From Ostrea edulis (Eukaryota): a DNA stretch of 64,000 nucleotides. The stretch is taken from contig NC_079172.1 of assembly GCF_947568905.1 (NCBI RefSeq), positions 9,114,001 to 9,178,000 of the forward strand. Direction: 5' to 3'. The position numbers and the translations under genes were made by a program. Positions 38,071 to 54,267 of this stretch are shown one piece after another. How positions within the stretch are numbered: position 1 is the first letter of the stretch; every line of letters starts with the position of its first letter. The notes below the pieces were generated by a model. That model saw only the letters and a program-made list of their open reading frames with translations, searched no databases and was not told the DNA's origin.

Positions 38071-41000
38071 ATGGGATATTTAAATTTACCGGACATTATG
38101 TGGGTAACTGTAGCCATTGTTCTTGTATTTGTCGGTCTACTTTGGAGTCTGACTGGACGACGTAGAGGTCTACCACCAGGTCCGCCATGTTACCCAATCG
38201 TCGGAAATCTCGGATGCATAAAACCGTCAGATTCCACAGAAGCACACAGGAGATTGAGGAAGATTCACGGAGACATTTATACCGTGATGATCTTCCACAA
38301 ACCGGTGATAGTCGTCCACGGATTTCATCACATACAAGAACTTTTTGTTAGATTTGGCTATATGTTTTCTGATCGACCAAAGGTTTATTTTTCAGAAGTT
38401 GTTACAAAAGGAAAAGGTACCCTATATATTCATTGACCAAGATCGCGACGGCAACTTGTGTTTTGTTGGACTTGAGGGCCTTAAAATGTTGCATGAGGTA
38501 GTAGGCCACATTTAGGTATGAGGGTCCAGTAAAACACATTGCCCGTGGTCCAGTCAATAAATGTTTTACTGAATTTCCGTCGAAAACATCATTCTCAATG
38601 GTGGATCCATCTTTTTTGCCTGATGTATTGCACCGAAATCCGATCAGCCACTTTGGTTGTATTTTTTGATGTCAGTTTTAAACGTTTCGGAACATCACGG
38701 AAATTATCGAGCTGGGTTTCGGCTGAGCAGATATATCACAGATATTAACGAATTAACCCGAGTACCAGCGAATATTAATGCTGCCTTGTCAAACCGTGCA
38801 ATGGAGACACGATTTTGGAACCATCCATTTCAAAATCGATGTTGAAATGAACAGTTTTATATCGAGATTTCAGTGCATGGACTGGGCAGTCCAAACATTA
38901 AAATTGGCTGGACGTTTTTTTTTAATATTGTATACAGTTATATATATAAGGAGTAAAAATATCGTCTGTTATACCCTTTAATTTTTTTCATATATAAAAC
39001 TAATACAATTTAAAACTAACATTTCAACTGTTAAATCAACTCTCACACTCGTGGTCTATTGACCGGTCAACAGTTTACGAACTGTTGACCGGGCAATAAT
39101 CTGCTTCATTTCTATTGGCTACGCAAGTCTACGGCTTCGGGCAACAGATCCATTCTCGGGTCAAACAAAACAGCTGTTGTCCTCGAACGCAGTCAATAAC
39201 TTTATAATATTGACCACTGGTCTCCAATACCAGCTATGTCAATTACATGTATGTTTATTACCTGTCAAAGGATCGAATCCTCAATCAATGTTGGGCTCAG
39301 CAAATTGCTAATTTTTTGTTTTCGTTGCAGGTGTAATCTGGACATCTGGTGCACTATGGAAGGAACAAAGAACATTCGTGCTGACAACGATGCGTAAATT
39401 TGGATTCGGGAGACGCTGCATGGAAAGTCACATAATGGAAGAAATAGACTGCGTCCTGGACGAATTCGAAAAATATAAAAACGACGCTTTTGACATTCAG
39501 ACACTACTAAATATATCAGTTTCAAACGTAATTTGCTCAGTCTTCTTTGGTAAAAGGTTTTGTTATGACGACACCAAATTCAAGCGTTTGATAGCTTTGT
39601 TAAATAAACTGATTGCCAGCATTAATGGTTCTTCGCCAGCGTTCATTTTTCCCTGGTTGCGGCATTTCAGAATATTTAACTTGGACAAAACGATGGAGTA
39701 CGCTAATGCAATGTTTGACTTTGTAACTGAAATAGTCGAGGAGCACAGAGAAAGTTTTGATGAGAACAACATCAATGATTACATCGATGCTTATCTTCTG
39801 GAACAAAAACAAAGAGGAAATGCACCCGACACCACATTCACAGGTAATGTATCGCAACATATATTCAACAACTACAGCTTAAATCTTCTGTTCTCGTTAT
39901 GTAATATTGCTTTCAAATAATATCATAAAAATATGTAGTGTGAATTTGACACTACTGTTAGGAGGAAGGTCCCATGATTCATCGGTAAAATAATTTGGCA
40001 ATAAAACTACTCTCTAGTCAGTGGAGTGAAAGCAGGGAGGTAAAGATTCGAAGCTAATGACCCCTTTTGCCTTTGCAACTTCACGCTGCCACTTCGCCAT
40101 TTCCCGCCTTCGTATGGTATTCTGATCAGATCACTTGTTCTTTCGATCCTTTGTGTTTTTAGCGAAGGATTGAAAGTGCGAGTGGGAAGGACCAAATATG
40201 GGAAGCCAACGGAGCAAAACTTATATTGCTCTTCTTCGCCACCATAACCATAACATTTGAGACGGGGGGGGGGGGGGGGGGGGGGTGGGGGGTGAACTAT
40301 AGGAGTGTCCGGTGGTAAAGTGTACAAAAAGTAATATATAGGACAGTTTTTCTATTCTTTTAAAAAACAAAGGTACAATACATCAAATCAACATCCACCC
40401 TCATGTAGTGTAGAGTCAAGCCGGAATACAGAGTAGTGGTTTGTACAGTCAAGTCTGTATACAGAGTAGTGGTTTGTACAGTCAAGTCTGTATACAGAGT
40501 AGTGGTTTGTACAGTCAAACCTGTATACAGAGTAGTGGTTTGTACAGTCAAGTCTGTATACAGAGTAGTGGTTTGTACAGTCAAGTCTGTATACAGAGTA
40601 GTGGTTTGTACAGTCAAGTCTGTATACAGAGTAGTGGTTTGTACAGTCAAACCTGAATACAGAGAAGTGGTTTGTACAGTCAAGCCAGTATACAGAGTAG
40701 TGGTTTGTACAGTCAAACCTGAATACAGAGAAGTGGTTTGTACAGTCAAGCCAGTATACAGAGTAGTGGTTTGTACAGTCAAACCTGTATACAGAGTAGT
40801 GGTTTGTACAGTCAAGGCAAGTATACAGAGAGGTGGTTTGTACAGTCAAGTCTGTATACAGAGTAGTGGTTTGTACAGTCAAGTCTGTATACAGAGTAGT
40901 GGTTTGTACAGTCAAGCCTGAATACAGAGAAGTGGTTTGTACAGTCAAGCCTGAATACCGAGTAGTGGTTTGTACAGTCAAACTTGAATACAGAGTAGTT

Positions 41001-42311
41001 GTTTGTACAGTGAAGCCTGAATATAGAGTAGTGGTGTGTACATTCAAGCCAGTATATAGAGTACTGCTGTAACGTTTTACATAGGAATACCGGTATATGA
41101 AAATATATCAAAAGTATTTCTCTCCAGACCAAAGGTAGTGCGATGTATCAATTCATGTATACAAGCATTATTATGTAGATAGATTCAAGTAGATCCCCTG
41201 GCACAATAGGAGTTCATGGTGTATGTATACCTAGTACATCTAAGAAGGTTTAATAAATCTTAATTTGAAGGACCACAAAGAATTAAACTGGAAGTGCCCC
41301 GATGTAATGTAGATTCCATGATCTTAGAACCATAACGGTCCACAAGAGGTAACTCAAGTGGGCTTCGTGGCCGATAGGACTTTTGGTTGATGCTGCTGGT
41401 CAAAAGTTTGAAATCTGTATAGATTTGCTTGTTGAATAACAAGGATATTTAAATTACTGTTCTTGAGTCGTTAGTTGGAAGTTCAAGATGACAATCTCGA
41501 ATTTTTCTTTATTTTATACAGATGAACAACTCAATCACAGTCTTCGTGACTTTTTCGTGGCGGGAACTGAGACAACTTCCACGACACTGAGGTGGGCGCT
41601 CCTGTACTTAATTCATCATCAGGACTGGCAGAAGACCCTCCAGAATGACATTGATGACGTCATCGGTCAGGCACAACCTAAAATGGAACACAAGGATGAA
41701 TTGCCAAGGATAGAGGCATTCATTCTGGAAGTCCAACGCTCGGCAAATATTGCACCAGTGAGTGTACCACACACATCCAATGAAGATTTCATCTACCATG
41801 GATACATTTTCCCGAAAGGCGCCATTGTGTTTGGAGCTTTAGATTCAGTAATGTCAGATCCTGAAATCTTTCCCGAACCTTCGACATTTAAACCAGAGAG
41901 ATTTCTGAACGATATCGGAAAATGCTATGGGGATCAGAAAACCAAGATGATTCCTTATTCAATAGGTATACACTTTGTATTTATCCTCATTACTTATTGA
42001 GAAGCTGGTACATGTAAATGGGGAAATTGTGTTAGAATAAACATTCCTTTATTTGATGTTTCATATCTATTTGGAAATAAGTTATACACAATAAAAGCAT
42101 GGATATAAATATCCCTGTATTTCCATCATCAGGGATGAGGTCATGTCTGGGGGAGTCTCTCGCCAGGATGGAACTATTCCTGTTTTTGACCAGATTTCTA
42201 CAAAAGTTTGAAGTTGAACCTGAGGATCCAGATCACCTACCTTCCCTGGATGGGACTTTAGGGATTACCAACATGCCACAACCCTTCAACTTAAGACTAG
42301 TCAAACGTTAG
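38071..42311 (+). CDS. Cytochrome P450, CYP2 clan (CYP2-like), 4 exons, 493 aa
   Basis: Exons 38071-38416, 39331-39843, 41522-41965, 42133-42311 (1482 nt, in frame, TAG stop). Motifs: N-terminal membrane anchor + PPGP, C-helix WKEQR, MRKFGFG, I-helix [10 protein letters not shown]-helix EVQR, PERF, heme loop [12 protein letters not shown]. An alternative start is Met at 38098. Confidence 0.95.
40415..41070. repeat. 33-bp minisatellite (~20 copies) in CYP intron 2
   Basis: Unit ACAGAGTAGTGGTTTGTACAGTCAAGTCTGTAT with variant copies; source of several artefactual ORFs. Confidence 0.95.
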
Positions 42312-44076
42312 AAGCGGATGTGTCTGTTTGAGCCGCCGTTGAAAAAAAAAATCAAGTGTCATGTTTCATAGCTGGATATTGAGTCCAAAACAGTAGAGGT
42401 TTGATTCGGGGTAATTCATTGCAACTTTAGACCAATCCCACACATACACTGTAGTAAACTGACCCCAATGGATTTTAACCCCAAAATGAAGTATGGACAA
42501 TTGTATATTACTTCAAGTAAGTGCTTTAAGAGGACTTTAAAACCATTTTACATCCCAAACGAAGTGACTTTGTGTAATCAGCAAATTGATATGTAAGATT
42601 CATCAATATTCAATACCCTTGTTACAGATTTAAAAACCCAAAGGGTTCAAAGACCCAGTTTAAGGATTAATGCCACAACATACATCTGTGAACTCAATCA
42701 TAAAGCTAAAAGCATTCATCTAAGACTATTACTTATGACACCTACGATTGATATACATGTAATATGAAATCCATACATATTGTTTAATTTCTACAATGTA
42801 TATATTTTTTATGAAGTTAAATCGCGTGAAACTATCTGATCGAGATTTGTCTTACAACTTTCATATTTTGTCTCTCCCAACTCTAACAAGACAACTGAAC
42901 CGAAATATCTTCGGACAGTAGACATGCCAAGATTTTCTAGAATGAACATCTCTCAAGATTTTCGGTTAATTGCAACGTGGAGAACCTGGATTCGATATTC
43001 GTTACCGGCGCCGCATCAAATCCAAGACGTTCAAAATAGATAAAGACTGTTAATTCGTCAGACATTATAAGTGAAAGTCCCGGATCTTTCAGATATATGA
43101 CCTCAAGAAAACTCAAGAGAGTTTTAAGAGGTCCTGTATCACGCACTGGTACAATAAAGAATCCATCACTGCTATGACCTTGAGCACCATGCATAGGTCA
43201 AACTTTGTGGCACTTCATCTTTAGCTGGCTGTGTTTCTATATTACAGAAAAAATATCGAATGGGACGTTAAACCGAGTGTTGTTTTTTTTAGCCATAAAT
43301 CGAACAAACCACATGCCCTTCGAACTAAAAATATGTAATGGTCATCAAAATGCCACGGAAAACCACTAGCAGGGTCATGTCATCTGTACTTGAAAACCAG
43401 TGAGATTTGTTCTTTTGACTTGAAACTCAGTAGAGTCGTCTGTTAGTCATGACTAAGTCGGACAACAATTTATACACATATATGAATGCTTACAGCCGAA
43501 TGACCTTGACCTTGTTCAACTTGGTATCATTTACAGTCATCCAATAGTTATGATAAGCAGCCTGTGGCGATTGATGGCTATCAGTGAAAGACTCCCTAAG
43601 ATACCATCCTGGACAATGATCGGTGTGTGTGCATGTACATTTATCTATTTTGTGCCCGTTCACGTTTTCTTCGTTATGGCACATCTAATATCCACAACAT
43701 CAAAAGAATAGGATCAGGTAAAAGTTCTTCGATATTCAGTCGGACAAAATTGTGTTTGATAATTACTCAGAAGTAGTAGTCGTATATCACGCCTAACGAA
43801 TCGATCGACCAACTTTGAACAGGACTAGAGTGTCTATTCTATCTACTCGTTTCCATCATATGACTTTTGATATCAATACACTACCCTTGTAGTACATTGT
43901 AATAAAAATCAAATTGCTATGCTATTAAACTAAGTTATAACAGCAGCTACCTACATTGTAGATACACCATGTATAGAATGCGTAACGAATATACCAGTAT
44001 ATTAGCATTATGAATATATTTCATTGAAGGAAAGCATACATATGCATTCGTTTAGATGCCCATGAAGTAATGGGTT

Positions 44077-45402
44077 TCACACACAAGAATTGTTATTTTC
44101 CATATTCAGCTGTTCTGTGGCCTTTAACTGTGTAAGATGTGAAAGATAATGACAAATCATTGGCATTTCATTGTATTTTCCTTCCTTAGCAATCTCCACT
44201 GCTTTAGATATGAATGTCAAGGCAGAGGACATGTCACCCTTGAGCTCCATTAAACGAGCTTTGGCGACACCGTACATCATTTGGCGACGATGTTCCAATT
44301 CGTCCAAAGGATCCAATAAAAGAAGTCGTTCTGCCTCTTTCACAGATTCCACGGAAACTTCATAACATGGTATCATCCTGCAGCGTTTTCCAATACCTAA
44401 ATGACAGTAGATCATTCTCAATATAAAAAGCCTCCTCCAGAATATTTTCACATCCTCATCTTCCCTGCTAAGGTCTTGGATACCCCGACTTGCCTCAGCC
44501 AGTAGCAGTTTCTTTATTTTCTCGGATGGATGCTCCTCTAATTCAGAAAGACGAAAAACAACGCTCTTGTAGATCATGTCTATTGATTCGATGCAGGTGT
44601 CCGTCGCATTGGCACATGAAAACCCCTCTTGCAACATGCATCTTCCTTCGTCTTGTTTTCCAAGAGAGGACAAAACGTCTGCTTTACGTCCATACAAAAG
44701 GACCCTAGATATATTTGGATTGCTGCTTTCGTCGAGAACGTCTTCAATGTCTTTGAACGCCCCTCCATAAGGATCAATATCGTCGGTCTTGTTTGTGAGG
44801 GCGTCTATTTCTGCAGCTTTTAGCGCAATATACCGGTCATTCATGTGCTGCCTTTTGGCCTCATTTTCTTCCATTTCTATGCGTTGTCTCAGTCTAGCGC
44901 CTATCAAAGATAAATCGCCCTGCGGATTTTTAAATGTGAATTCGTGAACTTGTTTCTTGATGAATTTAAAGTACTGTTGTATTGGCCTTCTGTCACCTAC
45001 AGCGGCACGCGCTACTTCCTGTACAAGTTTAGTACGATTGTACTCCTTGTAGTATGAAATAAGATCGTTAGCCAACTGTATGAATTCTACACAATACAGG
45101 ATGAAGACGAATGTTTTTAATGGATAACGTTTTGCAACCTCGTTTGCAAGGATTTCATATGAAAACAGAAATGGCGATTTTTCACGTTTTACGTTGATTA
45201 AATCAAAACACGCCTCAGAAATATACCCACGTTTACACATACAGTCAATAAGAGGCATAGGATCAACATCCAGCAGCATACTTGTAAAGAAAGCCTTTAA
45301 AATATCCCTTTCGAAGACATTCATATATGTTCGGTCATCACACGAGATTGGGACGATAATCCTGTCGTCCTCGAACACTTCGACTCCACTGTAAGACGCC
45401 AT
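44077..45402 (-). CDS. Uncharacterised 441-aa protein, single coding exon; putative death-fold (CARD-like) N-terminus plus conserved all-helical/TPR-like domain (paralogue 1)
   Basis: Uninterrupted 1326-nt ORF with in-frame TGA TAA just upstream of the ATG. Clearly paralogous to the 46449-48085 exon (LKAAEIDA, CIE..DMIYKSVVF, FW.RLF.LR.IYCHLGIGKR, LEHRR.MMYG). Domain call is by pattern only. Confidence 0.88.
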   Translation of the reverse strand: MASYSGVEVFEDDRIIVPISCDDRTYMNVFERDILKAFFTSMLLDVDPMPLIDCMCKRGYISEACFDLINVKREKSPFLFSYEILANEVAKRYPLKTFVFILYCVEFIQLANDLISYYKEYNRTKLVQEVARAAVGDRRPIQQYFKFIKKQVHEFTFKNPQGDLSLIGARLRQRIEMEENEAKRQHMNDRYIALKAAEIDALTNKTDDIDPYGGAFKDIEDVLDESSNPNISRVLLYGRKADVLSSLGKQDEGRCMLQEGFSCANATDTCIESIDMIYKSVVFRLSELEEHPSEKIKKLLLAEASRGIQDLSREDEDVKIFWRRLFILRMIYCHLGIGKRCRMIPCYEVSVESVKEAERLLLLDPLDELEHRRQMMYGVAKARLMELKGDMSSALTFISKAVEIAKEGKYNEMPMICHYLSHLTQLKATEQLNMENNNSCV

Positions 45403-45984
45403 GTTTGACGAATAGCTTTATCACCTAGCCTTCAAGTACATATATTTGTTACGTACACATACTTATGAATATCTTAGGCCTAGAAGTGATCCTACAAACA
45501 TCGCTAGGCCTACCGCTACCGGTATGTAGATAAAATATGTAAAATTCATATCCGAAACACCCTGTGCCCATTTTGTAAAACTGATCTACCCGTCTTTATC
45601 AAAAATGTTATGATACATATTAGATTACACACAATCAATTGATCTCGTACCTTCACTTTCAAGATTCATAATTCATAGGACACAGTGCTCACTTAAATCA
45701 CCGTGCTCTTTCAATGGTAATACATGCCATAAATATCGTTTAAGATACCGATATATATTGGTAGGAAAACCGTATTGGAACAGAACGACAGTAACGCTAT
45801 GATAAAATGACATTAAATTAGAGACAAGGCATTGGATCCCTTGAGATTATCACTACTATTTTATCCCACAAGACCAAATTCACAAATTATACCTTTTAAA
45901 TTTTAAAGTCTTAAGAAGTGAATAAACACTAAAACTAATCTCCTCACGTAAGGTTTTTAGTGTCATTTATTTGAACGTGTGAAG

Positions 45985-46315
45985 AGACATTATTTGTTTT
46001 ACATTATGAACCCTGGGTCGAGGCCTCTGCTGGTGGACTGTTAGTCCCCGAGGGTCTCTACAGCCCAGTAGCTAAGTACTTCGTTACTAGCTTGAAAATA
46101 CGTATACAAAATTATTATCTCCCTCACGCATAGCTCTTATCGTTAGACGAATTTGACTCCACTATTTTGGCACACTGGTTTTCCCTATAATAGCTCTAAA
46201 ACTTCATCGTTATTTCGGATTTCAAACATTTCGTTTGAGCATCACTGAAGAGACATTACTTGTCGAAATGCGCATCTGGTGCATCAAAATTGGTAACGTA
46301 TAAGTTTTACATTAT
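45985..46315 (+). mobile_element. Penelope-like terminal fragment carrying a hammerhead ribozyme
   Basis: Repeat-like segment between the two paralogues containing the hammerhead at 46239-46282; boundaries approximate. Confidence 0.6.
46239..46282 (+). ncRNA. Minimal type I hammerhead ribozyme
   Basis: Stem I GCATCA/TGGTGC (one G:U), core CUGAAGA, stem II GAC-ATTACTT-GTC, GAAA, short palindromic stem III (TGCGCA), cleavage triplet AUC (cut after 46276). Confidence 0.85.
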
Positions 46316-46448
46316 TTGAACATGTTTTATCTGATGGAATATGAACATGTTTTGCAGGCACTAAACATAGCACAAGGTAGTAAGATATTATGAATAGAAA
46401 GTCCTCTTCTCTCCTAATCAATTAGTCAAATTGCATATCTGTACAGAT

Positions 46449-49400
46449 TTAATATTGAAATGAAGATAAACTTAACTCGTCTACTCCACTTTGCAAATGA
46501 ATATTATCACTTTGCGAGGCTTCACTGGGACTTTGATTTGGTATACTACCAGTATCACTTTGCTGAACCTTTAGGTTCATTGTTTCTGTTTTTGTTTCTG
46601 TCATTGTTTCTGCAAGTTGCCTTCTCTCACCTAACACCGCCACCTGATCACTCGAGTTGAAGGCAATTATGCCTGGAGGTCCATCGCTATCGATGTAATT
46701 CCAAGGCTCTTCGGATGATATACTTTCGAAATGAATGGACTTATTTATTATAATTTCATCTGAAGTCTGTGTGTCGTTGGTTGACGACCTGGATGTTTGG
46801 CGAGAATAAATTGGTGATATTGTGTGAAACAAATATTCGGCAGAAAGTGTGACAACTTGGACTGTTTCTACATCAATTCTGAGCAAAGCATCCCGATAGG
46901 CAGACACGTTGCCTTTCTCACTGTAATTTCCCTCTTCGGCAAATTCCATAGCTTTATCAATGATGTCTCTTGCTTTCCGAACGTCTCCCAATATATGACA
47001 AAAACGCGCAGCTCCAATTCCATACATCATTTTCCTTCTATGTTCCAGGTTTTCCAAATTATCTTCCTGAAACATTTTTTCAACAATTTTTATCGATTCC
47101 TGAGATACATCATATCCTTCGATGATCTCGCCACGTTTTCCTATCCCTAAATGGCAATAGATTATTCTCAGTCTAAAAAGCCTAGACCAGAATAATCTGA
47201 CATCATCATCTTCCTCCGACAAAGAATCTAGTCCAATTTCTGCCTGATGAAAAAGCTTTTTCTGGTAATCTTTGTCTTTAGTCCTCTGAAACTGTAACAG
47301 GTAGAACACTACACTTTTATATATCATGTCTGTTGCTTCTATACATCTTTCGCACGTGTTCTGCCATGTGAAAGCATCTATAAGAAAATTTTCCCCATCG
47401 CTTGGGTTTGTCCCCAAAGAGGATGCAATATTTGCCTGCCGACCCAACATTAAGATAAGAGAAATCTCAGGGCAGGAGCTTTCTTCAATAATTGCATCAA
47501 TTTGTTGGAAGGGCTCTCCTTTAGGGTCTACGTTATCTGTTTGGTTGGTATGGGCGTCTATCTCCGCTGCTTTCAGACAAATGTATTGGTCATACAGATG
47601 CCGTCTTTTTCCAGGATTGCTTTCATTTTTAATATCCAATAGCATTTTTTTACCTATCAAACTAACTTCGGCGTACGGATTAGATGTGAATAGTTTATGA
47701 ACATCCTGTTTTATCTTTTTGAAATAAAATTGGATTTTCTTTCGGTTCCCGACAATTTTTCGAGAAACTTCTCTACATCTCGATTGTTCTGCGTAAGGAA
47801 GGTAAAATGAAAACAAGTCTTTTGCAACTTCTGCAAAATCAGTTTTATGCATCTTATACACCAGCTGGAGTGTTGTAACGTTTTTGTCAATGCTCGCAAT
47901 AAGAATGCGGACGTGATTTTCATTCCAGGATTCTCCAGCCCCTTCTAACTGCGTCACACAGTCTTGTGGCACAATCCCCAGACTATTCATTGTCCTTGCC
48001 AGCTTTCGTAAATCCACTCTCCTTCCACTTAGAATGCTACCAAAGATTTGTAAAACGAGCCTAGGAATTCTGGGTACCATGGATTCTGGAAAGATATAGA
48101 TGACTAAATGTACAGTGTATAAGAATTTCGTATTCAGTACAGCTACTCTGTACATCGCAGTTGTCAGTTATACCGTGATTGATTGATTGCGGAGTGTGAA
48201 ATTACCGTCAGTCCAACTGTTCTCCAGAGATGATACTGCTAAGCTTGGGACCTTCGATTCCTCTACAGATTGATCTATAAGTAAGTATATTCCTTTAATA
48301 AATAATACTAGTAATATATTTAAATGTATATGTTGAATATCAAAACGATACATACATTTTCTGATTTCGAAATACCAGATGATATCGGAGTTCGAACCTG
48401 CATTTTGTGGTGCTGTCAATTCTTTAGGAAGTATATTTTTAATTTCTATAGGGAGGTTATGGTAATTATTGTTATTAAGCTATAGTGTGTGTTAATTGTG
48501 ATTGTTTTACACTTAAAATCTACGATTGATTTATTTGCATAAACTTGTTTTCTCTATTAGGCTCCACACAAACTAATGCATACTCGTGTCTAGTAAAAAG
48601 AAAATAAACACGGGGGGGGGGGGGGTTGCTCTTGAATGATGCAAAAATTCGTCAATTTATCATATAGAATATGAGGGAGAAGCATTGCCGGTTTTAAAAA
48701 CTGCACATAGTTGCAATGTCTTGCCTCAAAATTTAAGGTGAAACTTTAAACAAGAGCTCCATGGGCCACATCGCTCAACTGAGTTACCCTGGCCCAATTT
48801 TAAAAATTTTCCTACAAGATTAAAGACTACATCTAGTGCTTTTTACAGTGTGTTATGTAAGACGGGTTTTAACACTACATCTAGTGCTTTTTACAGTGTG
48901 TTATGTAAGACAGGTTTTAACACTACAACTAGTGCTTTTTACAGTGTGTTATGTAAGACAGGTTTTAACACTACAACTGCTTTTTACAGTGTGTTATATA
49001 TGACGGGTTTTAACACTACATCTAGTGCTTTTTACAGTGTGTTATATAAGACAGGTTTTAACACTACATCTAGTGCTTTTTACAGCGTGTTATGTCAGAC
49101 AGGTTTTAACACTACAACTAGTGCTTTTTACAGTGTGTTATGTAAGACGGGTTTTAACACTAGAACTAGTGCTTTTTACAGTGTGTTATATAAGACAGGT
49201 TTTAACACTACAACTAGTGCTTTTTACAGTGTGTTATATAAGACGGGTTTTAACACTACATCTAGTGCTTTTTACAGTGTGTTATATAAGACAGGTTTTA
49301 ACACTACATCTAGTGCTTTTTACAGCGTGTTATGTCAGACAGGTTTTAACACTACAACTAGTGCTTTTTACAGTGTGTTATGTAAGACGGGTTTTAACAC

Positions 49401-52400
49401 TAGAACTAGTGCTTTTTACAGTGTGTTATATAAGACAGGTTTTAACACTACAACTAGTGCTTTTTACAGTGTGTTATATATGACGGGTTTTAACACTACA
49501 TCTAGTGCTTTTTACAGTGTGTTATATAAGACAGGTTTTAACACTACATCTAGTGCTTTTTACAGCGTGTTATGTCAGACAGGTTTTAACACTACAACTA
49601 GTGCTTTTTACAGTGTGTTATGTAAGACGGGTTTTAACACTAGAACTAGTGCTTTTTACAGTGTGTTATATAAGACAGGTTTTAACACTACAACTAGTGC
49701 TTTTTACAGCGTGTTATATAAGACGGGTTTTAACACTACATCTAGTGCTTTTTACAGTGTGTTATATAAGACAGGTTTTAACACTACAACTAGTGCTTTT
49801 TACAGTGTGTTATATAAGACGGGTTTTAACACTACATCTAGTGCTTTTTACAGTGTGTTATATAAGACAGGTTTTAACACTACATCTAGTGCTTTTTACA
49901 GCGTGTTATGTCAGACAGGTTTTAACACTACAACTAGTGCTTTTTACAGTGTGTTATGTAAGACGGGTTTTAACACTAGAACTAGTGCTTTTTACAGTGT
50001 GTTATATAAGACAGGTTTTAACACTACAACTAGTGCTTTTTACAGTGTGTTATATATGACGGGTTTTAACACTACATCTAGTGCTTTTTACAGTGTGTTA
50101 TATAAGACAGGTTTTAACACTACATCTAGTGCTTTTTACAGCGTGTTATGTCAGACAGGTTTTAACACTACAACTAGTGCTTTTTACAGTGTGTTATGTA
50201 AGACGGGTTTTAACACTAGAACTAGTGCTTTTTACAGTGTGTTATATAAGACAGGTTTTAACACTACAACTAGTGCTTTTTACAGCGTGTTATATAAGAC
50301 GGGTTTTAACACTACATCTAGTGCTTTTTACAGTGTGTTATATAAGACAGGTTTTAACACTACAACTAGTGCTTTTTACAGCGTGTTATGTCAGACAGGT
50401 TTTAACACTACAACTAGTGCTTTTTACAGTGTGTTATGTAAGACGGGTTTTAACACTAGAACTAGTGCTTTTTACAGTGTGTTATGTAAGACAGGTTTTA
50501 ACACAACATCTAGTGCTTTTTACAGTGTGTTATATAAGACATGTTTTAACACTACAACTAGTGCTTTTTACAGTGTGTTCTGTAAGACAGGTTTTAACAC
50601 TACAACTGGTGCTTTTTACAGTGTGTTATGTAAGACGGGTTTTAACACAACTAGTGCTTTTCTAAACACGATGATCTCAGTAAACAACGTGGTAACAGGA
50701 GAGTGAATAACATCCGGATTACATCATCGTTAGGAAAGTAGTCATTTCGTTGTATATGTATAGCATAACCCTTTCAACGATTAAATCGGTATATTTTCAT
50801 CAATAAACGAAAACGATCTTTATTTTCTTTGTTAGTCTATACTCCAGTAATTTTTTCCACTCAGATAGTAACATCACTAGCTTCAGGTGAAATGCCAGTT
50901 CATGAAGCTTAAGACCCTAAGCAGTGATATTTGTCAACTTTAACCGTGACGCAGGGCCTCCGTTTTCAATTTATATCCAGAAGACCCAGGACGTTCGCTA
51001 TGCCGGGCACTTGGAAAAGGAACAATCACTGTCTATGTTCAAAATCTTAGCACGGTGGCGAATCACGTGACTTTGGCATGACCTATTACCCGAAAAAAGA
51101 CGACAAAAGTCAACACAAGGGAAAATTCAAACGAGTAAGCAACACCTTTATCAATAGCAAATTGTCACACAACTTCTATCAACATTTGAAGAAATGATAG
51201 TTCTACGTTGTTGGTCTGCGGCAGATAGAAGTGAGGCAGTAATGTGTTCCTGAGAAAATTCTTCAAATGTTGATATAAGTTATGTGACAATTCGTTATTG
51301 ATAAAGGTGTTACTTATTCGTTTGAATTTTCCCTTGTGTTGACTTTCGTCGTCATTTTTCCGGGTAATAGTTTATGCACAAGTCACGTGATTCGCCATCG
51401 TGCTTAGGTTTAACGCGGAATAGGACCCATGCCCTCCATTTTGCGGAGCGAGCGCCCTAACCACTAGGATGTATATTGTTTAACATCACACTTGAGAACG
51501 TTTCACTCATATGGAGACGCCACAATTGCAAGTGAAGGGCTGCAAAATTTAAGCCTACGCTCGGCGCTTATGGCCTTTGAGCAAGGAGGGACCTGGGTTT
51601 TATGGTCTCATCGGAACGACCTCCCCATTAGTCGCCTCTTACGATAAGCAAGGGGTAGTGAGGACCTATTTTAACCAGGATCACCATGCGACCATTATAA
51701 CCACTAGGCTACTACGACTGAAAAAAATGTCATAATTTTTCTGTCGGAAGGAGAGTAATTTTTAATATAAATTGATTTTGTACCTTATGTATTTAAATCA
51801 CTGCATGTCTATTCTACTCATTACGCTAATCATGAGTAAAAAGTTCCAATAATAGCAAATGAATACCAAACCTACGTGTGGAAAAATGTAGAAGAGCTAG
51901 CTTTAATTATGTTACATGTACATAAATGAAAATTTTAGGTTAACTCTAAACGTATTTGAATGCAAATCACTCAGTGTATAAACAATTTACCATAAGTACT
52001 GATATGATCATGAAATGCTGAAGTTGCTCCCAAATCATCATGGTCGTCAAAGGATTCCTTTTTCAGTGAAACACATCCTTTGAGACCGCCTTCTATACCG
52101 TTATTCGTCGTCTGACCAGTGTTTAGTGATCCCATGTTGAAACTTGTAAGAATCATTTCCTGTTCACTGCAAATTTCACTGCTTGTCTGCAAATAAAAAC
52201 ATCCAAACAATAAAAACAACCAAAAACAAAACACCCAACAATAAAAAGGGTCCTAAAATGGAATTCTCAGATAATGAGACAAAGATTTGGAAGCATTTGC
52301 TTACCTTGTGACCGTTACTATCGGTTTCAGAGCAGACTTGCTTTTCAGTTGCCAATATTGGAATTTCCTCGATGTTTTCTATTGGTCGTAAGTATGGAAC

Positions 52401-54267
52401 TATCACATCAACAATTATAGAAAAATGTATTTTAAAAAACACATCTCCAAATAACACATCTTTTTATTGAGTTTTCCCCTTTATTTATTACTTGCAAAAG
52501 TACTACTTTGGCCAAAGATTTGTTTTCCAATTGCTTTGGAATTTCAGGGCTAGTGGAAGAGAGATTAAACATATACCATAAACATAAGACATGCAACATA
52601 GGTAGTATGCAAGGTGAAGATAACGAACAGTGATCAATCTCATAACTCCTACAAGCAATACAAAATAGATAGTTGGGCAAACACGGACCCCTGGACACAC
52701 CAGAGGTGGGATCAGGTGCCTAGGAGGAGTAAGCATCCCCTGTTGATCGGTCACACCCGCCGTGAGCCCCATATCCTGATCAGGTAAACGGAGTTATCCG
52801 CAGTCAAATCAGTGTGCCAAGAACGGCTTAACAATCGGTATGAAACACGTCAGACAGCATTTGACCCAAGGCGAGGTTGTATTGACGAACTAGATCGTTA
52901 TAACGACCATAGAATTTGCGAAATGCTGACTTCAATCGAGACTGTTGAAATCCCTGTACCATCAACTTGTTTGTCAGTAGCTTACCTCGATTTAAAAACT
53001 GACTATACCCAGAACAAGCTCTTGCATATCTGTTCCTCTGCCAAACACGTGGCACTACAAGTGAAAGCCACGAGTCTTTGTGAAATGTGACCTTCAAAAC
53101 AGAGGTCCGTGTAGGTACTATAAAGAACCCAGAGTTCTATTATACACGGCGGTGGTGACCGGTCGACAGGGGATGCTTACTCATCCTAGGCACCTGATCT
53201 CACCTCTGGTGTGTCCAGGGGTCCGTGTTTGCCCAACTTTCTATTTTGTATTGCTTATAGGAGTTATGAGATTGATCACTGTTCATTATCTTCACCTTTC
53301 ATAAGTCAACGTTTGTGGTACTTCACGTGAAGCTGGTTCTACAAAAATGAAAAATTCTCGAATGGGACTTAAATAGCATACAAAAGATCCTGAGGCCAAG
53401 CCCTAGTAATGTTCATCAATTATGTATATTGTTATTTGATTGTGAAACAATAAGATTTGTTGTACCTGCTTGATCACTGTGCAGTGAACTGGGGTCTAAC
53501 CGAGAAACTGGTAGTTCTGTAAGAAGATCACCAACAGGGTTCGTCTGGAAAAGAAGATGTATCTGTGAAATACTACGTCACAGAGCGTGGTCTCACTCAG
53601 AATGCAAAATCAGAGTTTGATAAATGATGTTCATCTTAGTCACACACGATTTGACCTTCGTCTGTCAGTCCACCAAGTGTAAAGTCAATGTCTTGTAAAG
53701 GACAACAGTTATAACTAAGCCAAAGCTTAAATTTGATGATTGATTAAGAAACAGACAAAAAGAGATAGGCAGACAGATCGTAAACAATAAGCTCCCTCTG
53801 ATATTTGTTGCTCGTAAACATTGCAACTACATTTCTGAGATGACCATGATGATGATGATGATGGAAACTGTTGATATCAATAGGAACAATATCTCACCTT
53901 CCGGTTGTGACAACTATCTTGCTTTTCCATTTCCGGTATCGGAATTCCTTCGTTGCTTTCCAAAGATTCCTTTATTGACAGTCGCAGTGGATCTATATCA
54001 GACAACATCACAAATAAATAAATTAATAAAATCAACGACCTGCACACATTTTTGAATATATGTATGGTTACTTGTCACGTTGTACAATTTGATCTTACTA
54101 CCATTGAGGTGCGTCGGATGTGTGACGTCATGGCACCGAACAGAAGTATTACGTAGAGAACGTTGATCAAGCGATTCACATCTTAAAAGATTTAATGAAT
54201 CCCTATCTCCTGTCAATGAATCCGGTTTCAACACAGGACATCGACCAAGAATGTCGTCAAACTCCAT
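46449..54267 (-). CDS. Uncharacterised ~785-aa protein, 7 exons; low-complexity N-terminal extension, CARD-like module, conserved helical domain, S/T/E-rich tail (paralogue 2)
   Basis: Large last exon 46449-48085 (acceptor TTTCCAG|AATCCATG, phase 1). Upstream exons chain in phase with GT-AG junctions: 54099-54267, 53898-53992, 53466-53562, 52305-52399, 51991-52186, 48206-48274 (total 2358 nt). The last exon is certain; the upstream exons and the true start are inferred from splice signals only. Confidence 0.72.
48826..50660. repeat. 48-bp minisatellite (~38 copies) with higher-order structure, in an intron of paralogue 2
   Basis: Unit ACTACAACTAGTGCTTTTTACAGTGTGTTATATAAGACAGGTTTTAAC; variant units recur at 240-bp intervals. 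Produces the 618-aa artefactual ORF. Confidence 0.96.
51051..51402. mobile_element. Transib-superfamily (RAG-like termini) foldback MITE inserted in a SINE
   Basis: ~150-bp inverted arms starting CACGGTGGCGAATCACGTGAC and CACGATGGCGAATCACGTGAC; 5-bp TSD CTTAG (51046-51050, 51403-51407); short central spacer. Confidence 0.8.
52610..53302. mobile_element. Penelope-like element: minus-strand RT C-terminus + 3' region (52610-53035) with an inverted 3'-region copy (53144-53302)
   Basis: RYARACSGYSQFLNRGKLLTNKLMVQGFQQSRLKSAFRKFYGRYNDLV resembles the C-terminal part of Penelope-like reverse transcriptases; the flanking 3' regions are reverse complements. Confidence 0.75.

What the first reader, a model, noticed from the sequence alone, without database searches (positions are those of the whole stretch)
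44077..48085. Tandem pair of unrecognised paralogues sharing a conserved ~280-aa all-helical domain
Seen: two long minus-strand ORFs align without large gaps over ~280 aa, with shared blocks YxxLKAAEIDAxTN, GRxAxxxSSLG, CIExxDMIYKSVVF, FWxRLFxLRxIYCHLGIGKR and LEHRRxMMYG. Both frames are intact despite heavy divergence, which argues for purifying selection. I cannot assign them to a named family. Inference: the helix-turn-helix periodicity (A/L/G at TPR-like positions in the last ~60 aa) suggests an alpha-solenoid. Tandem duplication, a single large exon and a death-fold-like N-terminus are typical of lineage-expanded innate-immune sensors or adaptors in bivalves. This is the best candidate here for an undescribed system.
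Basis: partly seen in the sequence, partly recalled or inferred. Interest (0 to 1): 0.75.

Follow-up and report, generated by a model that had tools for sequence, protein, structure and literature searches.

The report
Mollusc CARD-plus-TPR adaptor gene pair
Two neighbouring flat-oyster genes belong to an uncharacterised, apparently mollusc-only family whose proteins join a caspase-recruitment (CARD) domain to a TPR solenoid, a layout that suggests a cell-death or immune adaptor built without the usual ATPase engine.

Summary
Two intact minus-strand ORFs share 45% identity over 337 aa (E 2e-97), and all five quoted motifs are present.

The window is Ostrea edulis.
- Gene A (44077-45402) has a single-exon CDS.
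- Gene B is RefSeq LOC125658250, "uncharacterized".

AlphaFold models and fold searches give two domains:
- An N-terminal six-helix death fold, closest to the CED-4, Apaf-1 and caspase-9 CARDs (Z up to 10.2).
- A TPR superhelix of about 300 aa (Z up to 19).

Pfam does not recognise the CARD in A or B. Profile-profile links tie it to bona fide oyster CARDs (P 5e-20, then 1e-11), and distant family members pass or nearly pass the Pfam CARD cut-off. No NTPase domain is present.

A search of 1.84 billion representative proteins found only 239 relatives. Every named one is a mollusc: many bivalve orders plus Patella limpets. O. edulis has at least 14 loci, mostly in tandem clusters. The A/B split predates the oyster genera.

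Selection is purifying (omega 0.08 for the TPR, 0.16 for the CARD).

The immune role remains an inference. I found no paper describing the family. It is a new domain architecture built from known modules.

The parts
44077..45402 (-). Gene A: complete single-exon CDS (441 aa plus stop) of a CARD-TPR protein
   Evidence: The ORF is open. Saccostrea orthologues of 433-443 aa start at the same Met and are 74% identical. An allelic Logan contig, L001, is collinear with 43191-46025.
45025..45321 (-). Gene A CARD-like death-fold domain (residues ~28-126, six helices)
   Evidence: AF2 domain model has pLDDT 89.5. VIA gives Z 10.2 to the CED-4 CARD, 9.8 to caspase-9 and 9.5 to Apaf-1, and nearly all top-50 rows are death folds. 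Foldseek's top rows are CARDs. hhalign links it to Pfam-positive CARDs.
44086..44988 (-). Gene A TPR-type superhelix (residues ~139-439, 13 helices)
   Evidence: AF2 model has pLDDT 81. VIA gives Z 19.0 to APPBP2, 17.4 to TSK, 16.6 to LGN, 16.4 to Rap and 15.9 to MalT domain III. Foldseek's best hit is LGN/Pins.
46449..48085 (-). Gene B (LOC125658250): last coding exon plus stop, encoding CARD, TPR and a Ser-rich tail (residues 235-779 of isoform X4)
   Evidence: Exact match to P0021 residues 235-779, with the acceptor AG at 48087-48086.
47778..48074 (-). Gene B CARD-like domain (approximate limits, by alignment to A)
   Evidence: Alignment A2 and hhalign.
46836..47741 (-). Gene B TPR superhelix (approximate limits, by alignment to A)
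   Evidence: BLASTP alignment to A residues 84-419 and family alignment A1.
46452..46835 (-). Gene B C-terminal Ser/Thr-rich tail (~128 aa), absent from gene A
   Evidence: ORF translation. It is conserved in Crassostrea orthologues, with omega 0.14.
48206..48274 (-). Gene B coding exon 6 (residues 212-234)
   Evidence: Exact peptide match with AG/GT borders.
51991..52186 (-). Gene B coding exon 5
   Evidence: Exact match to P0021 residues 147-211, with CAG acceptor and GTAAAT donor.
52305..52399 (-). Gene B coding exon 4
   Evidence: Exact match to P0021 residues 115-146, with TAG acceptor and GTAAGC donor.
53466..53544 (-). Gene B coding exon 3
   Evidence: Exact match to P0021 residues 89-114.
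53898..53992 (-). Gene B coding exon 2
   Evidence: Exact match to P0021 residues 58-88.
54099..54267 (-). Gene B coding exon 1 (start codon at 54267). Exons 1-6 encode a 234-aa Ser-rich region with no family or fold match.
   Evidence: Exact match to P0021 residues 1-56. The seven exon lengths sum to 2337 = 3 x 779.

Best explanation
Shown. Genes A and B are ancient tandem paralogues in Ostrea edulis. They belong to a small, apparently mollusc-restricted protein family with a two-module architecture: a divergent N-terminal CARD (death-fold six-helix bundle), a short disordered linker, and a ~300-aa TPR-type superhelix. There is no NTPase domain. Gene B adds Ser-rich N- and C-terminal extensions that match no family or fold. 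Both genes are under purifying selection, strongest on the TPR module.

Inferred. The proteins act as cytosolic adaptors or sensors. The TPR superhelix binds a conserved ligand or partner peptide, as its closest structural neighbours do (APPBP2, LGN/Pins, Rap/NprR, MalT domain III). The CARD then makes homotypic CARD-CARD contacts that recruit or nucleate CARD-bearing effectors. Candidates are caspases or other members of the at least 90 CARD loci in this genome. This would feed into cell-death or innate-immune signalling. In logic it resembles an Apaf-1/NLR-type 'death fold plus repeat sensor' protein with the ATPase switch left out.
For: Paralogy: 45% identity over 337 aa, E 2e-97.

Species and gene model: gene B is 100% identical to O. 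edulis LOC125658250 isoform X4, with exons verified one by one.

TPR fold: VIA Z 19.0-15.9 to APPBP2, TSK, LGN, Rap and MalT-III over residues 135-441; Foldseek top hit LGN.

CARD fold: domain model pLDDT 89.5 with six helices. Z 10.2 to the CED-4 CARD (99 aa, 3.3 A), 9.8 to caspase-9 CARD and 9.5 to Apaf-1 CARD; virtually every top-50 row is a death fold. Foldseek's top rows are the CED-4, Apaf-1, MAVS and RIG-I CARDs.

Sequence link to CARD:
- N-domains of the A/B type versus a 67-representative family profile: P 4.7e-20.
- That family profile versus eight Pfam-positive oyster CARDs: P 1.2e-11.
- An equivalent chain through a smaller set: 2.9e-14 and 8.3e-14.
- Pfam CARD on distant members: 33.2 bits in P0150 (cut-off 23.9), 23.8 in P0125, 22-24.7 in the O. 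edulis paralogue L012.
- CARD and CARD_2 are the only recurrent Pfam families across 67 family N-termini.
- UniRef auto-names one member 'CARD domain-containing protein'.

Selection: omega is 0.08 for the TPR, 0.16 for the CARD and 0.50 for the N-terminal Ser-rich region between two 90%-identical B orthologues. One difference lies in 1,299 CDS bases against about 28 in 1.5 kb of flanks between alleles of A.

Distribution: 239 relatives among 1.84e9 representatives, and all named ones are molluscs. O. edulis has at least 14 loci, mostly tandem. The A and B clades each contain Ostrea, Saccostrea and, for B, Crassostrea/Magallana; the A clade's two further rows are unnamed contigs.
Against: A and B themselves get no Pfam CARD or TPR hit above cut-off, and the direct A2-versus-CARD hhalign is weak (P 4e-4, probability 35%). 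The CARD assignment therefore rests on the predicted fold plus transitive profile links.

No binding, oligomerisation, expression or induction data exist for any member. I found no paper on the family.

The very low omega of the TPR argues against a fast-evolving pathogen receptor. It fits a housekeeping or developmental partner equally well.

TPR fold matches are generic, and Z values of 13-19 are common for helical repeats (note).

Transcription of gene A in O. edulis was not demonstrated.
Confidence: 0.6

Rival explanations
1. A TPR scaffold with a housekeeping or developmental role (for example chaperone, cohesin-loader-like or ubiquitin-ligase substrate receptor). Here the N-terminal helical bundle is merely a structural cap or a degenerate, non-signalling CARD.
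For: The TPR is the most constrained part (omega 0.08). The best structural neighbours are scaffold or substrate-receptor TPRs such as APPBP2, TSK, LGN and APC subunits. Language-model neighbours are MAU2/Scc4 cohesin-loader TPRs at score 0.91. Pfam fails to see a CARD in A or B.
Against: The CARD is itself constrained (omega 0.16) and is retained across the whole family, from limpets to oysters. The family is lineage-restricted and expanded in tandem, which is unlike core housekeeping TPR proteins. No sequence match to MAU2 or other conserved TPR families was seen among the 150 hits listed.
Confidence: 0.2
2. A regulator/decoy pair. The short gene A protein (CARD-TPR only) modulates the long gene B protein through CARD-CARD or TPR-TPR hetero-oligomers. 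This would resemble CARD-only inhibitors such as ICEBERG; B's Ser-rich extensions carry the output.
For: The A and B lineages have each been retained in Ostrea and Saccostrea (B also in Crassostrea/Magallana), and both lie on the same contig in Saccostrea echinata. B alone has conserved Ser-rich extensions.
Against: Nothing tested here bears on an A-B contact. I ran no complex prediction because adjacency alone is weak grounds. The two are only 45% identical and may simply have diverged in ligand.
Confidence: 0.1
3. Non-functional or selfish DNA: decaying duplicates, or a transposon-borne ORF.
For: Multiple copies lie in tandem clusters, and some paralogous loci carry in-frame stops.
Against: Both ORFs are intact, and orthologues are intact in several genera. 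Omega is 0.08-0.2. No transposase, RT or integrase domain was found. Copies are deeply diverged rather than near-identical. B orthologues occur as contiguous 693-702-aa ORFs on 3.2-3.6 kb assembled contigs, as expected of spliced mRNA.
Confidence: 0.02

Closest known systems
Apaf-1 / CED-4 / Dark apoptosome proteins
   Same: They have an N-terminal CARD that gives the best structural matches to the A/B N-domain (Z 10.2 CED-4, 9.5 Apaf-1). The overall logic of 'death fold first, repeat sensor last' is shared.
   Different: A and B have no NB-ARC/AAA+ NTPase between the two modules; a disordered linker of about 12 residues joins them directly. The sensor repeats are TPR rather than WD40. There is no detectable sequence similarity outside the CARD.
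NLR/STAND proteins with TPR sensor arms (MalT domain III, bacterial STAND-TPR 6mfv, invertebrate NACHT-TPR proteins)
   Same: The TPR superhelix resembles MalT domain III (Z 15.9) and a STAND TPR sensor (Z 11.6). Some animal NLRs also combine a death fold with repeats.
   Different: The defining NACHT/NB-ARC domain is absent. The whole protein is predicted all-helical, and no NTPase family was hit.
TIR-TPR proteins of molluscs (a category listed in the Aplysia immunome survey, PMC9334734)
   Same: The design is the same: an innate-immunity adaptor domain fused directly to TPR repeats without an NTPase, in the same phylum.
   Different: The adaptor domain is CARD, not TIR. No sequence relationship was tested. 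The comparison is by architecture only.
Peptide- or ligand-binding TPR superhelices: APPBP2, LGN/Pins, Rap/NprR, ALPK1 N-terminal domain
   Same: They are the best or good fold matches to residues 135-441 (Z 19.0, 16.6, 16.4 and 13.8). All bind a ligand or peptide in the concave groove.
   Different: Sequence identity is only 8-11%, none carries a CARD, and the fold match is generic to TPR arrays.
MAVS and other CARD adaptors with disordered signalling regions
   Same: Gene B combines a CARD with long Ser-rich extensions. The MAVS and RIG-I CARDs appear among the fold hits, and CARD_2 (the RIG-I/MAVS type) hits six family members.
   Different: No transmembrane anchor was noted, a large TPR domain is present, and no validated TRAF- or IRF-recruiting motif was identified.

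Membership tests
CARD (Pfam PF00619; death-fold superfamily) | Six-helix antiparallel bundle of about 90 residues with death-fold topology | tested here: met
   The AF2 domain model has pLDDT 89.5 and six helices. Z is 10.2, 9.8 and 9.5 to the CED-4, caspase-9 and Apaf-1 CARDs over 92-100 residues, and the top-50 rows are almost all death folds.
CARD (Pfam PF00619; death-fold superfamily) | Score above the Pfam gathering cut-off (23.9 bits) on the protein itself | tested here: not met
   A and B have no CARD hit even at E 10. Distant family members do: P0150 scores 33.2 bits, L012 24.7 in the genome scan and 22 in hmmscan, and P0125 23.8.
CARD (Pfam PF00619; death-fold superfamily) | Profile-level homology to bona fide CARDs | tested here: met
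   A2 vs A5 gives P 4.7e-20 and A5 vs A3 (oyster Pfam-positive CARDs) P 1.2e-11. A2 vs A4 gives 2.9e-14 and A4 vs A3 8.3e-14. The direct A2 vs A3 comparison gives only P 4e-4.
CARD (Pfam PF00619; death-fold superfamily) | Homotypic CARD-CARD binding or filament nucleation | not tested
   No complex prediction or experiment was done.
TPR repeat proteins (Pfam clan CL0020) | Right-handed superhelix of paired antiparallel helices | tested here: met
   Thirteen helices span residues 139-439. Z is 19.0-13 to many TPR structures. Foldseek's top hit is the LGN TPR, TM 0.55 normalised to the target.
TPR repeat proteins (Pfam clan CL0020) | Pfam TPR model above its cut-off | tested here: not met
   A and B have only sub-threshold ARM_TT21 hits of 13-14 bits. 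Relatives give sub-threshold TPR_8, TPR_12 and TPR_MalT hits, the best being 25.4 bits against a cut-off of 25.7 in P0017.
STAND / NLR / apoptosome ATPases | Central NACHT or NB-ARC P-loop NTPase domain | tested here: not met
   No NTPase family was found in A, B or 30 relatives scanned. The model is all-helical with a 12-16-residue linker between CARD and TPR.
IFIT proteins | Sequence or strong fold match to the IFIT TPR clamp | tested here: not met
   No sequence hit in PDB. IFIT1 and IFIT5 appear only at Foldseek E 0.12-0.13 with TM 0.17-0.35.
Transposon-encoded ORF | Transposase, RT or integrase domain, or many near-identical copies | tested here: not met
   No such Pfam domain was found. 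The 14 genomic loci are deeply diverged.

The most novel reading that the evidence does not exclude
The family is a mollusc-specific class of NTPase-independent cell-death or immune sensors. Ligand capture in the conserved TPR groove would directly license CARD polymerisation and caspase (or other CARD-effector) activation, giving an 'apoptosome/inflammasome without an ATPase'. The A/B tandem pair would act as a short and a long subunit of one signalling unit.
Probability: 0.2. Interest if true: 0.7.

Novelty: new variant of a known kind. Interest (0 to 1): 0.5.

Why it matters
Bivalves lack adaptive immunity and have hugely expanded apoptosis and innate-immune gene sets, yet most CARD-bearing proteins in them are unstudied. 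A conserved CARD fused directly to a TPR sensor, with no ATPase switch, matches none of the characterised CARD proteins compared here.

If it signals, it would show another way to couple ligand recognition to death-fold assembly. It would also add candidate genes for disease resistance in farmed oysters and mussels (Bonamia, OsHV-1, Vibrio).

More practically, standard Pfam scans miss the CARD in the oyster A/B branch, so surveys of the molluscan 'CARD-ome' based on Pfam will undercount it.

Tried and rejected
- **Direct Pfam scans.** Scans of A, B and 30 relatives gave nothing above cut-off except CARD in distant members.
- **PDB sequence search.** Family profiles gave no significant hit. The only lead was E~1 full-length matches to designed proteins built on the Apaf-1 CARD template.
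- **Transcript status of gene A.** Logan contig L001 (SRR25445060) is collinear with the genome and ends without a poly(A) tail. It cannot show whether A is transcribed.
- **ORFs 3' of the B orthologues on L026 and L027.** I tested whether they were A orthologues, which would have meant genomic contigs. They are unrelated low-complexity ORFs.
- **HEPN-like Rx4H motif** (R329...H334). Considered and rejected: it is absent from the distant branch (L012, L013) and the fold is TPR.
- **TRAF6-type or pLxIS-type motifs** in B's Ser-rich regions. Only loose, non-conserved matches by eye, so not claimed.
- **ESM Atlas.** By shape and by features it returned only the family's own mollusc cluster over full length, plus generic TPR proteins.
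- **Literature.** Searches for the LOC identifiers, 'CARD-TPR' and related terms, and CARD+TPR+oyster found no description of the family.
- **Earlier scan notes.** Nothing relevant.
- **Steps not run.** No complex prediction was run, because adjacency alone did not justify an A-B binding claim. A joined, spliced model of gene B was neither built nor searched: exons were checked one at a time against RefSeq protein P0021, and that stored protein served as the full-length reference.


Full report
**What is there.** The window comes from Ostrea edulis. The larger ORF is 100% identical to RefSeq "uncharacterized protein LOC125658250 isoform X4". The window maps to contig 9 of the assembly at 9,114,001-9,178,000. 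Two minus-strand ORFs, 44077-45402 (441 aa, gene A) and 46449-48155 (568 aa, part of gene B), are open. They align at 45% identity over 337 residues with a single one-residue gap, E 2e-97. They coincide with invariant or near-invariant columns of a 24-sequence family alignment (A1).

**Gene structures.** Gene A has a single-exon CDS. Saccostrea orthologues of 433-443 aa begin at the same methionine.

Gene B does not. I matched the stored RefSeq protein P0021 to the window exon by exon, without building or searching a joined model. This gives seven coding exons with canonical AG/GT borders:
- 54267-54099
- 53992-53898
- 53544-53466
- 52399-52305
- 52186-51991
- 48274-48206
- 48085-46452, plus the stop codon

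Their lengths sum to 2,337 = 3 x 779. Exons 1-6 encode a 234-aa Ser-rich region with no family or fold match. B's stop lies 1,046 bp upstream of A's ATG.

**Fold.** With A1 as the input alignment, AlphaFold2 gives an all-helical model of A (mean pLDDT 81).

Residues 135-441 are a TPR-type superhelix.
- VIA-align: Z 19.0 to APPBP2 (268 aa, 3.7 A), 17.4 to TSK, 16.6 to LGN, 16.4 to a phage Rap receptor, 15.9 to MalT domain III.
- Foldseek: top hit LGN/Pins, E 0.02.
- These matches are generic to TPR arrays, so they establish the fold only.

The N-terminal 113 residues were modelled alone from a 23-sequence alignment (A2). They form six helices at pLDDT 89.5.
- VIA-align best matches are the CED-4 CARD (Z 10.2, 99 aa, 3.3 A), caspase-9 CARD (9.8), Apaf-1 CARD (9.5), CED-3 CARD (9.4) and FADD death domain (9.1).
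- Essentially every one of the top 50 rows is a death-fold domain.
- Foldseek's list is headed by the CED-4, Apaf-1, MAVS and RIG-I CARDs, at E 0.25-0.8 and probability up to 0.95.

**Sequence-level test of the CARD assignment.** Pfam sees no CARD in A, B or their close relatives. The only weak recurrent hit with a CARD-like fold is HSR, in 3 members (E 0.002). Deeper members of the same family do carry a recognisable CARD at the same position:
- P0150: 33.2 bits (cut-off 23.9)
- P0125: 23.8 bits
- P0135: 19.3 bits
- P0131: 18.5 bits
- O. edulis paralogue on contig 2 (L012, 423-aa ORF): 24.7 bits in the genome scan and 22 in hmmscan

L012's TPR part matches A at E 4e-15. Across 67 representative N-termini, CARD (9 members) and CARD_2 (6 members) are the only Pfam families that recur.

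Profile-profile comparisons close the chain:

| Comparison | P-value | Probability |
|---|---|---|
| A/B-type N-domains (A2) vs 67-member family N-domain profile (A5) | 4.7e-20 | 99.3% |
| A5 vs eight Pfam-positive CARDs from the O. edulis genome (A3) | 1.2e-11 | 97.4% |
| A2 vs smaller intermediate set (A4) | 2.9e-14 | 98.2% |
| A4 vs A3 | 8.3e-14 | 98.1% |
| A2 vs A3, direct | 4e-4 | 35% |

I therefore call the domain a divergent CARD. The caveat is that A and B themselves fail the Pfam threshold.

No NTPase or any other globular domain lies between or beside the two modules.

**Distribution and history.** A profile search of 1.84 billion representative proteins finds only 239 relatives at E <= 1e-3, of which 176 are at E <= 1e-10. 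Every member with a source name is a mollusc:
- Oysters and pearl oysters: Ostrea, Saccostrea, Crassostrea/Magallana, Pinctada
- Mussels: Mytilus
- Scallops: Mizuhopecten, Pecten, Argopecten
- Other bivalves: Mya, Dreissena, the unionid Sinanodonta
- Limpets: Patella vulgata and P. caerulea

All are labelled uncharacterised or hypothetical, with two exceptions. One has an automatic UniRef name, "CARD domain-containing protein", and one IMG record is called "TPR repeat protein". The unnamed majority, and the 89 weaker hits that were not listed, could extend this range.

O. edulis has at least 14 loci on five chromosomes, mostly in tandem groups of two or three.

A quick maximum-likelihood tree (SH-aLRT support only; the careful search did not finish) has these features:
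- An A clade and a B clade, each with 100% support. Each holds Ostrea and Saccostrea sequences; the B clade also holds named Crassostrea/Magallana sequences. The A clade's other two rows are unnamed Logan contigs.
- A and B as sister clades, at 91% support.
- Mytilus sequences outside both.

The duplication therefore predates the oyster genera sampled and has been kept since.

**Selection and expression.** By the Nei-Gojobori method, two B orthologues that are 90% identical give omega 0.20 overall. By region:

| Region | omega |
|---|---|
| N-terminal Ser-rich region | 0.50 |
| CARD | 0.16 |
| TPR | 0.08 |
| C-terminal tail | 0.14 |

Ostrea-to-other-genus comparisons have saturated dS, with omega of about 0.1. 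A versus B is saturated (dN 0.63).

An allelic contig of A differs at one site in 1,299 CDS bases, against about 28 differences in 1.5 kb of flanks.

B orthologues occur as uninterrupted 693-702-aa ORFs on 3.2-3.6 kb Logan contigs. The O. edulis gene spreads the same coding sequence over 7.8 kb and seven exons, so these contigs are most simply spliced mRNAs. That is an inference, because it assumes intron conservation. Transcription of gene A could not be decided.

**Mechanism (inferred).** The architecture is a recruitment domain plus a repeat sensor. The many invariant polar residues in the TPR part point to a specific, conserved ligand or partner, not a fast-evolving pathogen epitope. These residues include K195, E198, D200, N204, R239, E272, Y278, K279, W322 and the H371-R372-R373 stretch. 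The very low omega agrees.

The genome offers many possible CARD partners, with 90 loci above the Pfam CARD cut-off.

I therefore favour a cytosolic adaptor or sensor that couples TPR-mediated binding to CARD-CARD assembly in cell-death or innate-immune signalling. It would be comparable in logic to Apaf-1/NLR proteins but without the ATPase. It also parallels the "TIR-TPR" category already listed for molluscs (PMC9334734). The main rival is a non-signalling TPR scaffold with a vestigial CARD. Pseudogene and transposon readings are effectively excluded.

**Novelty.** I found no paper that mentions these genes or a CARD-TPR family. The Aravind-group survey of death-like domains (PMC8195603) discusses bivalve expansions of TRADD-N, not this family.

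Both modules are well known. The new elements are the direct CARD-TPR fusion without an NTPase, the mollusc-restricted family, and the fact that Pfam misses the CARD in the oyster A/B branch. I rate it a new variant of a known kind, of moderate interest.

Noticed in passing
G000 contig 8 and others, e.g. L016:1459-2469(+) (= C8:4927182-4928192); also C8:4139921, C8:33043192, C1:46028202, C7:27404829, C9:1206659: At least 20 loci in the O. edulis genome carry a single ORF of about 340-356 aa that fuses a strong CARD (55 bits) to a PC4/p15 ssDNA-binding coactivator domain (50 bits). Fourteen loci give the identical CARD score (51.5 bits), which suggests very recent amplification, perhaps on a mobile element.
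   Followed up: partly
window 48826-50661: A 48-bp tandem array (38 copies, 93% match) creates a spurious 618-aa plus-strand ORF. It lies inside the 3.7-kb intron between coding exons 5 and 6 of gene B.
   Followed up: no
window 40409-41063: A 33-bp tandem array (about 20 copies, 90% match) produces several overlapping artefactual ORFs on both strands.
   Followed up: no
window 41488-42000 (+): This ORF reads like a C-terminal exon of a cytochrome P450, judged by eye from the translation only. It would be a neighbouring, unrelated gene upstream of the pair on the opposite strand.
   Followed up: no
G000:C9:65058578-65102952, C9:70452325-70472244, C2:69387135-69407157: Other members of the CARD-TPR family in O. 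edulis also sit in tandem groups of two or three within 20-45 kb. Some carry in-frame stops and are probably pseudogenes.
   Followed up: partly
P0034 (1041 aa), P0093 (1039 aa), P0098 (976 aa), Mya arenaria P0197 (1232 aa): Some family members are 800-1,200 aa long, with 400-700 extra residues that match no Pfam family at E <= 0.001. These may be unrecognised extra domains or long disordered regions.
   Followed up: partly
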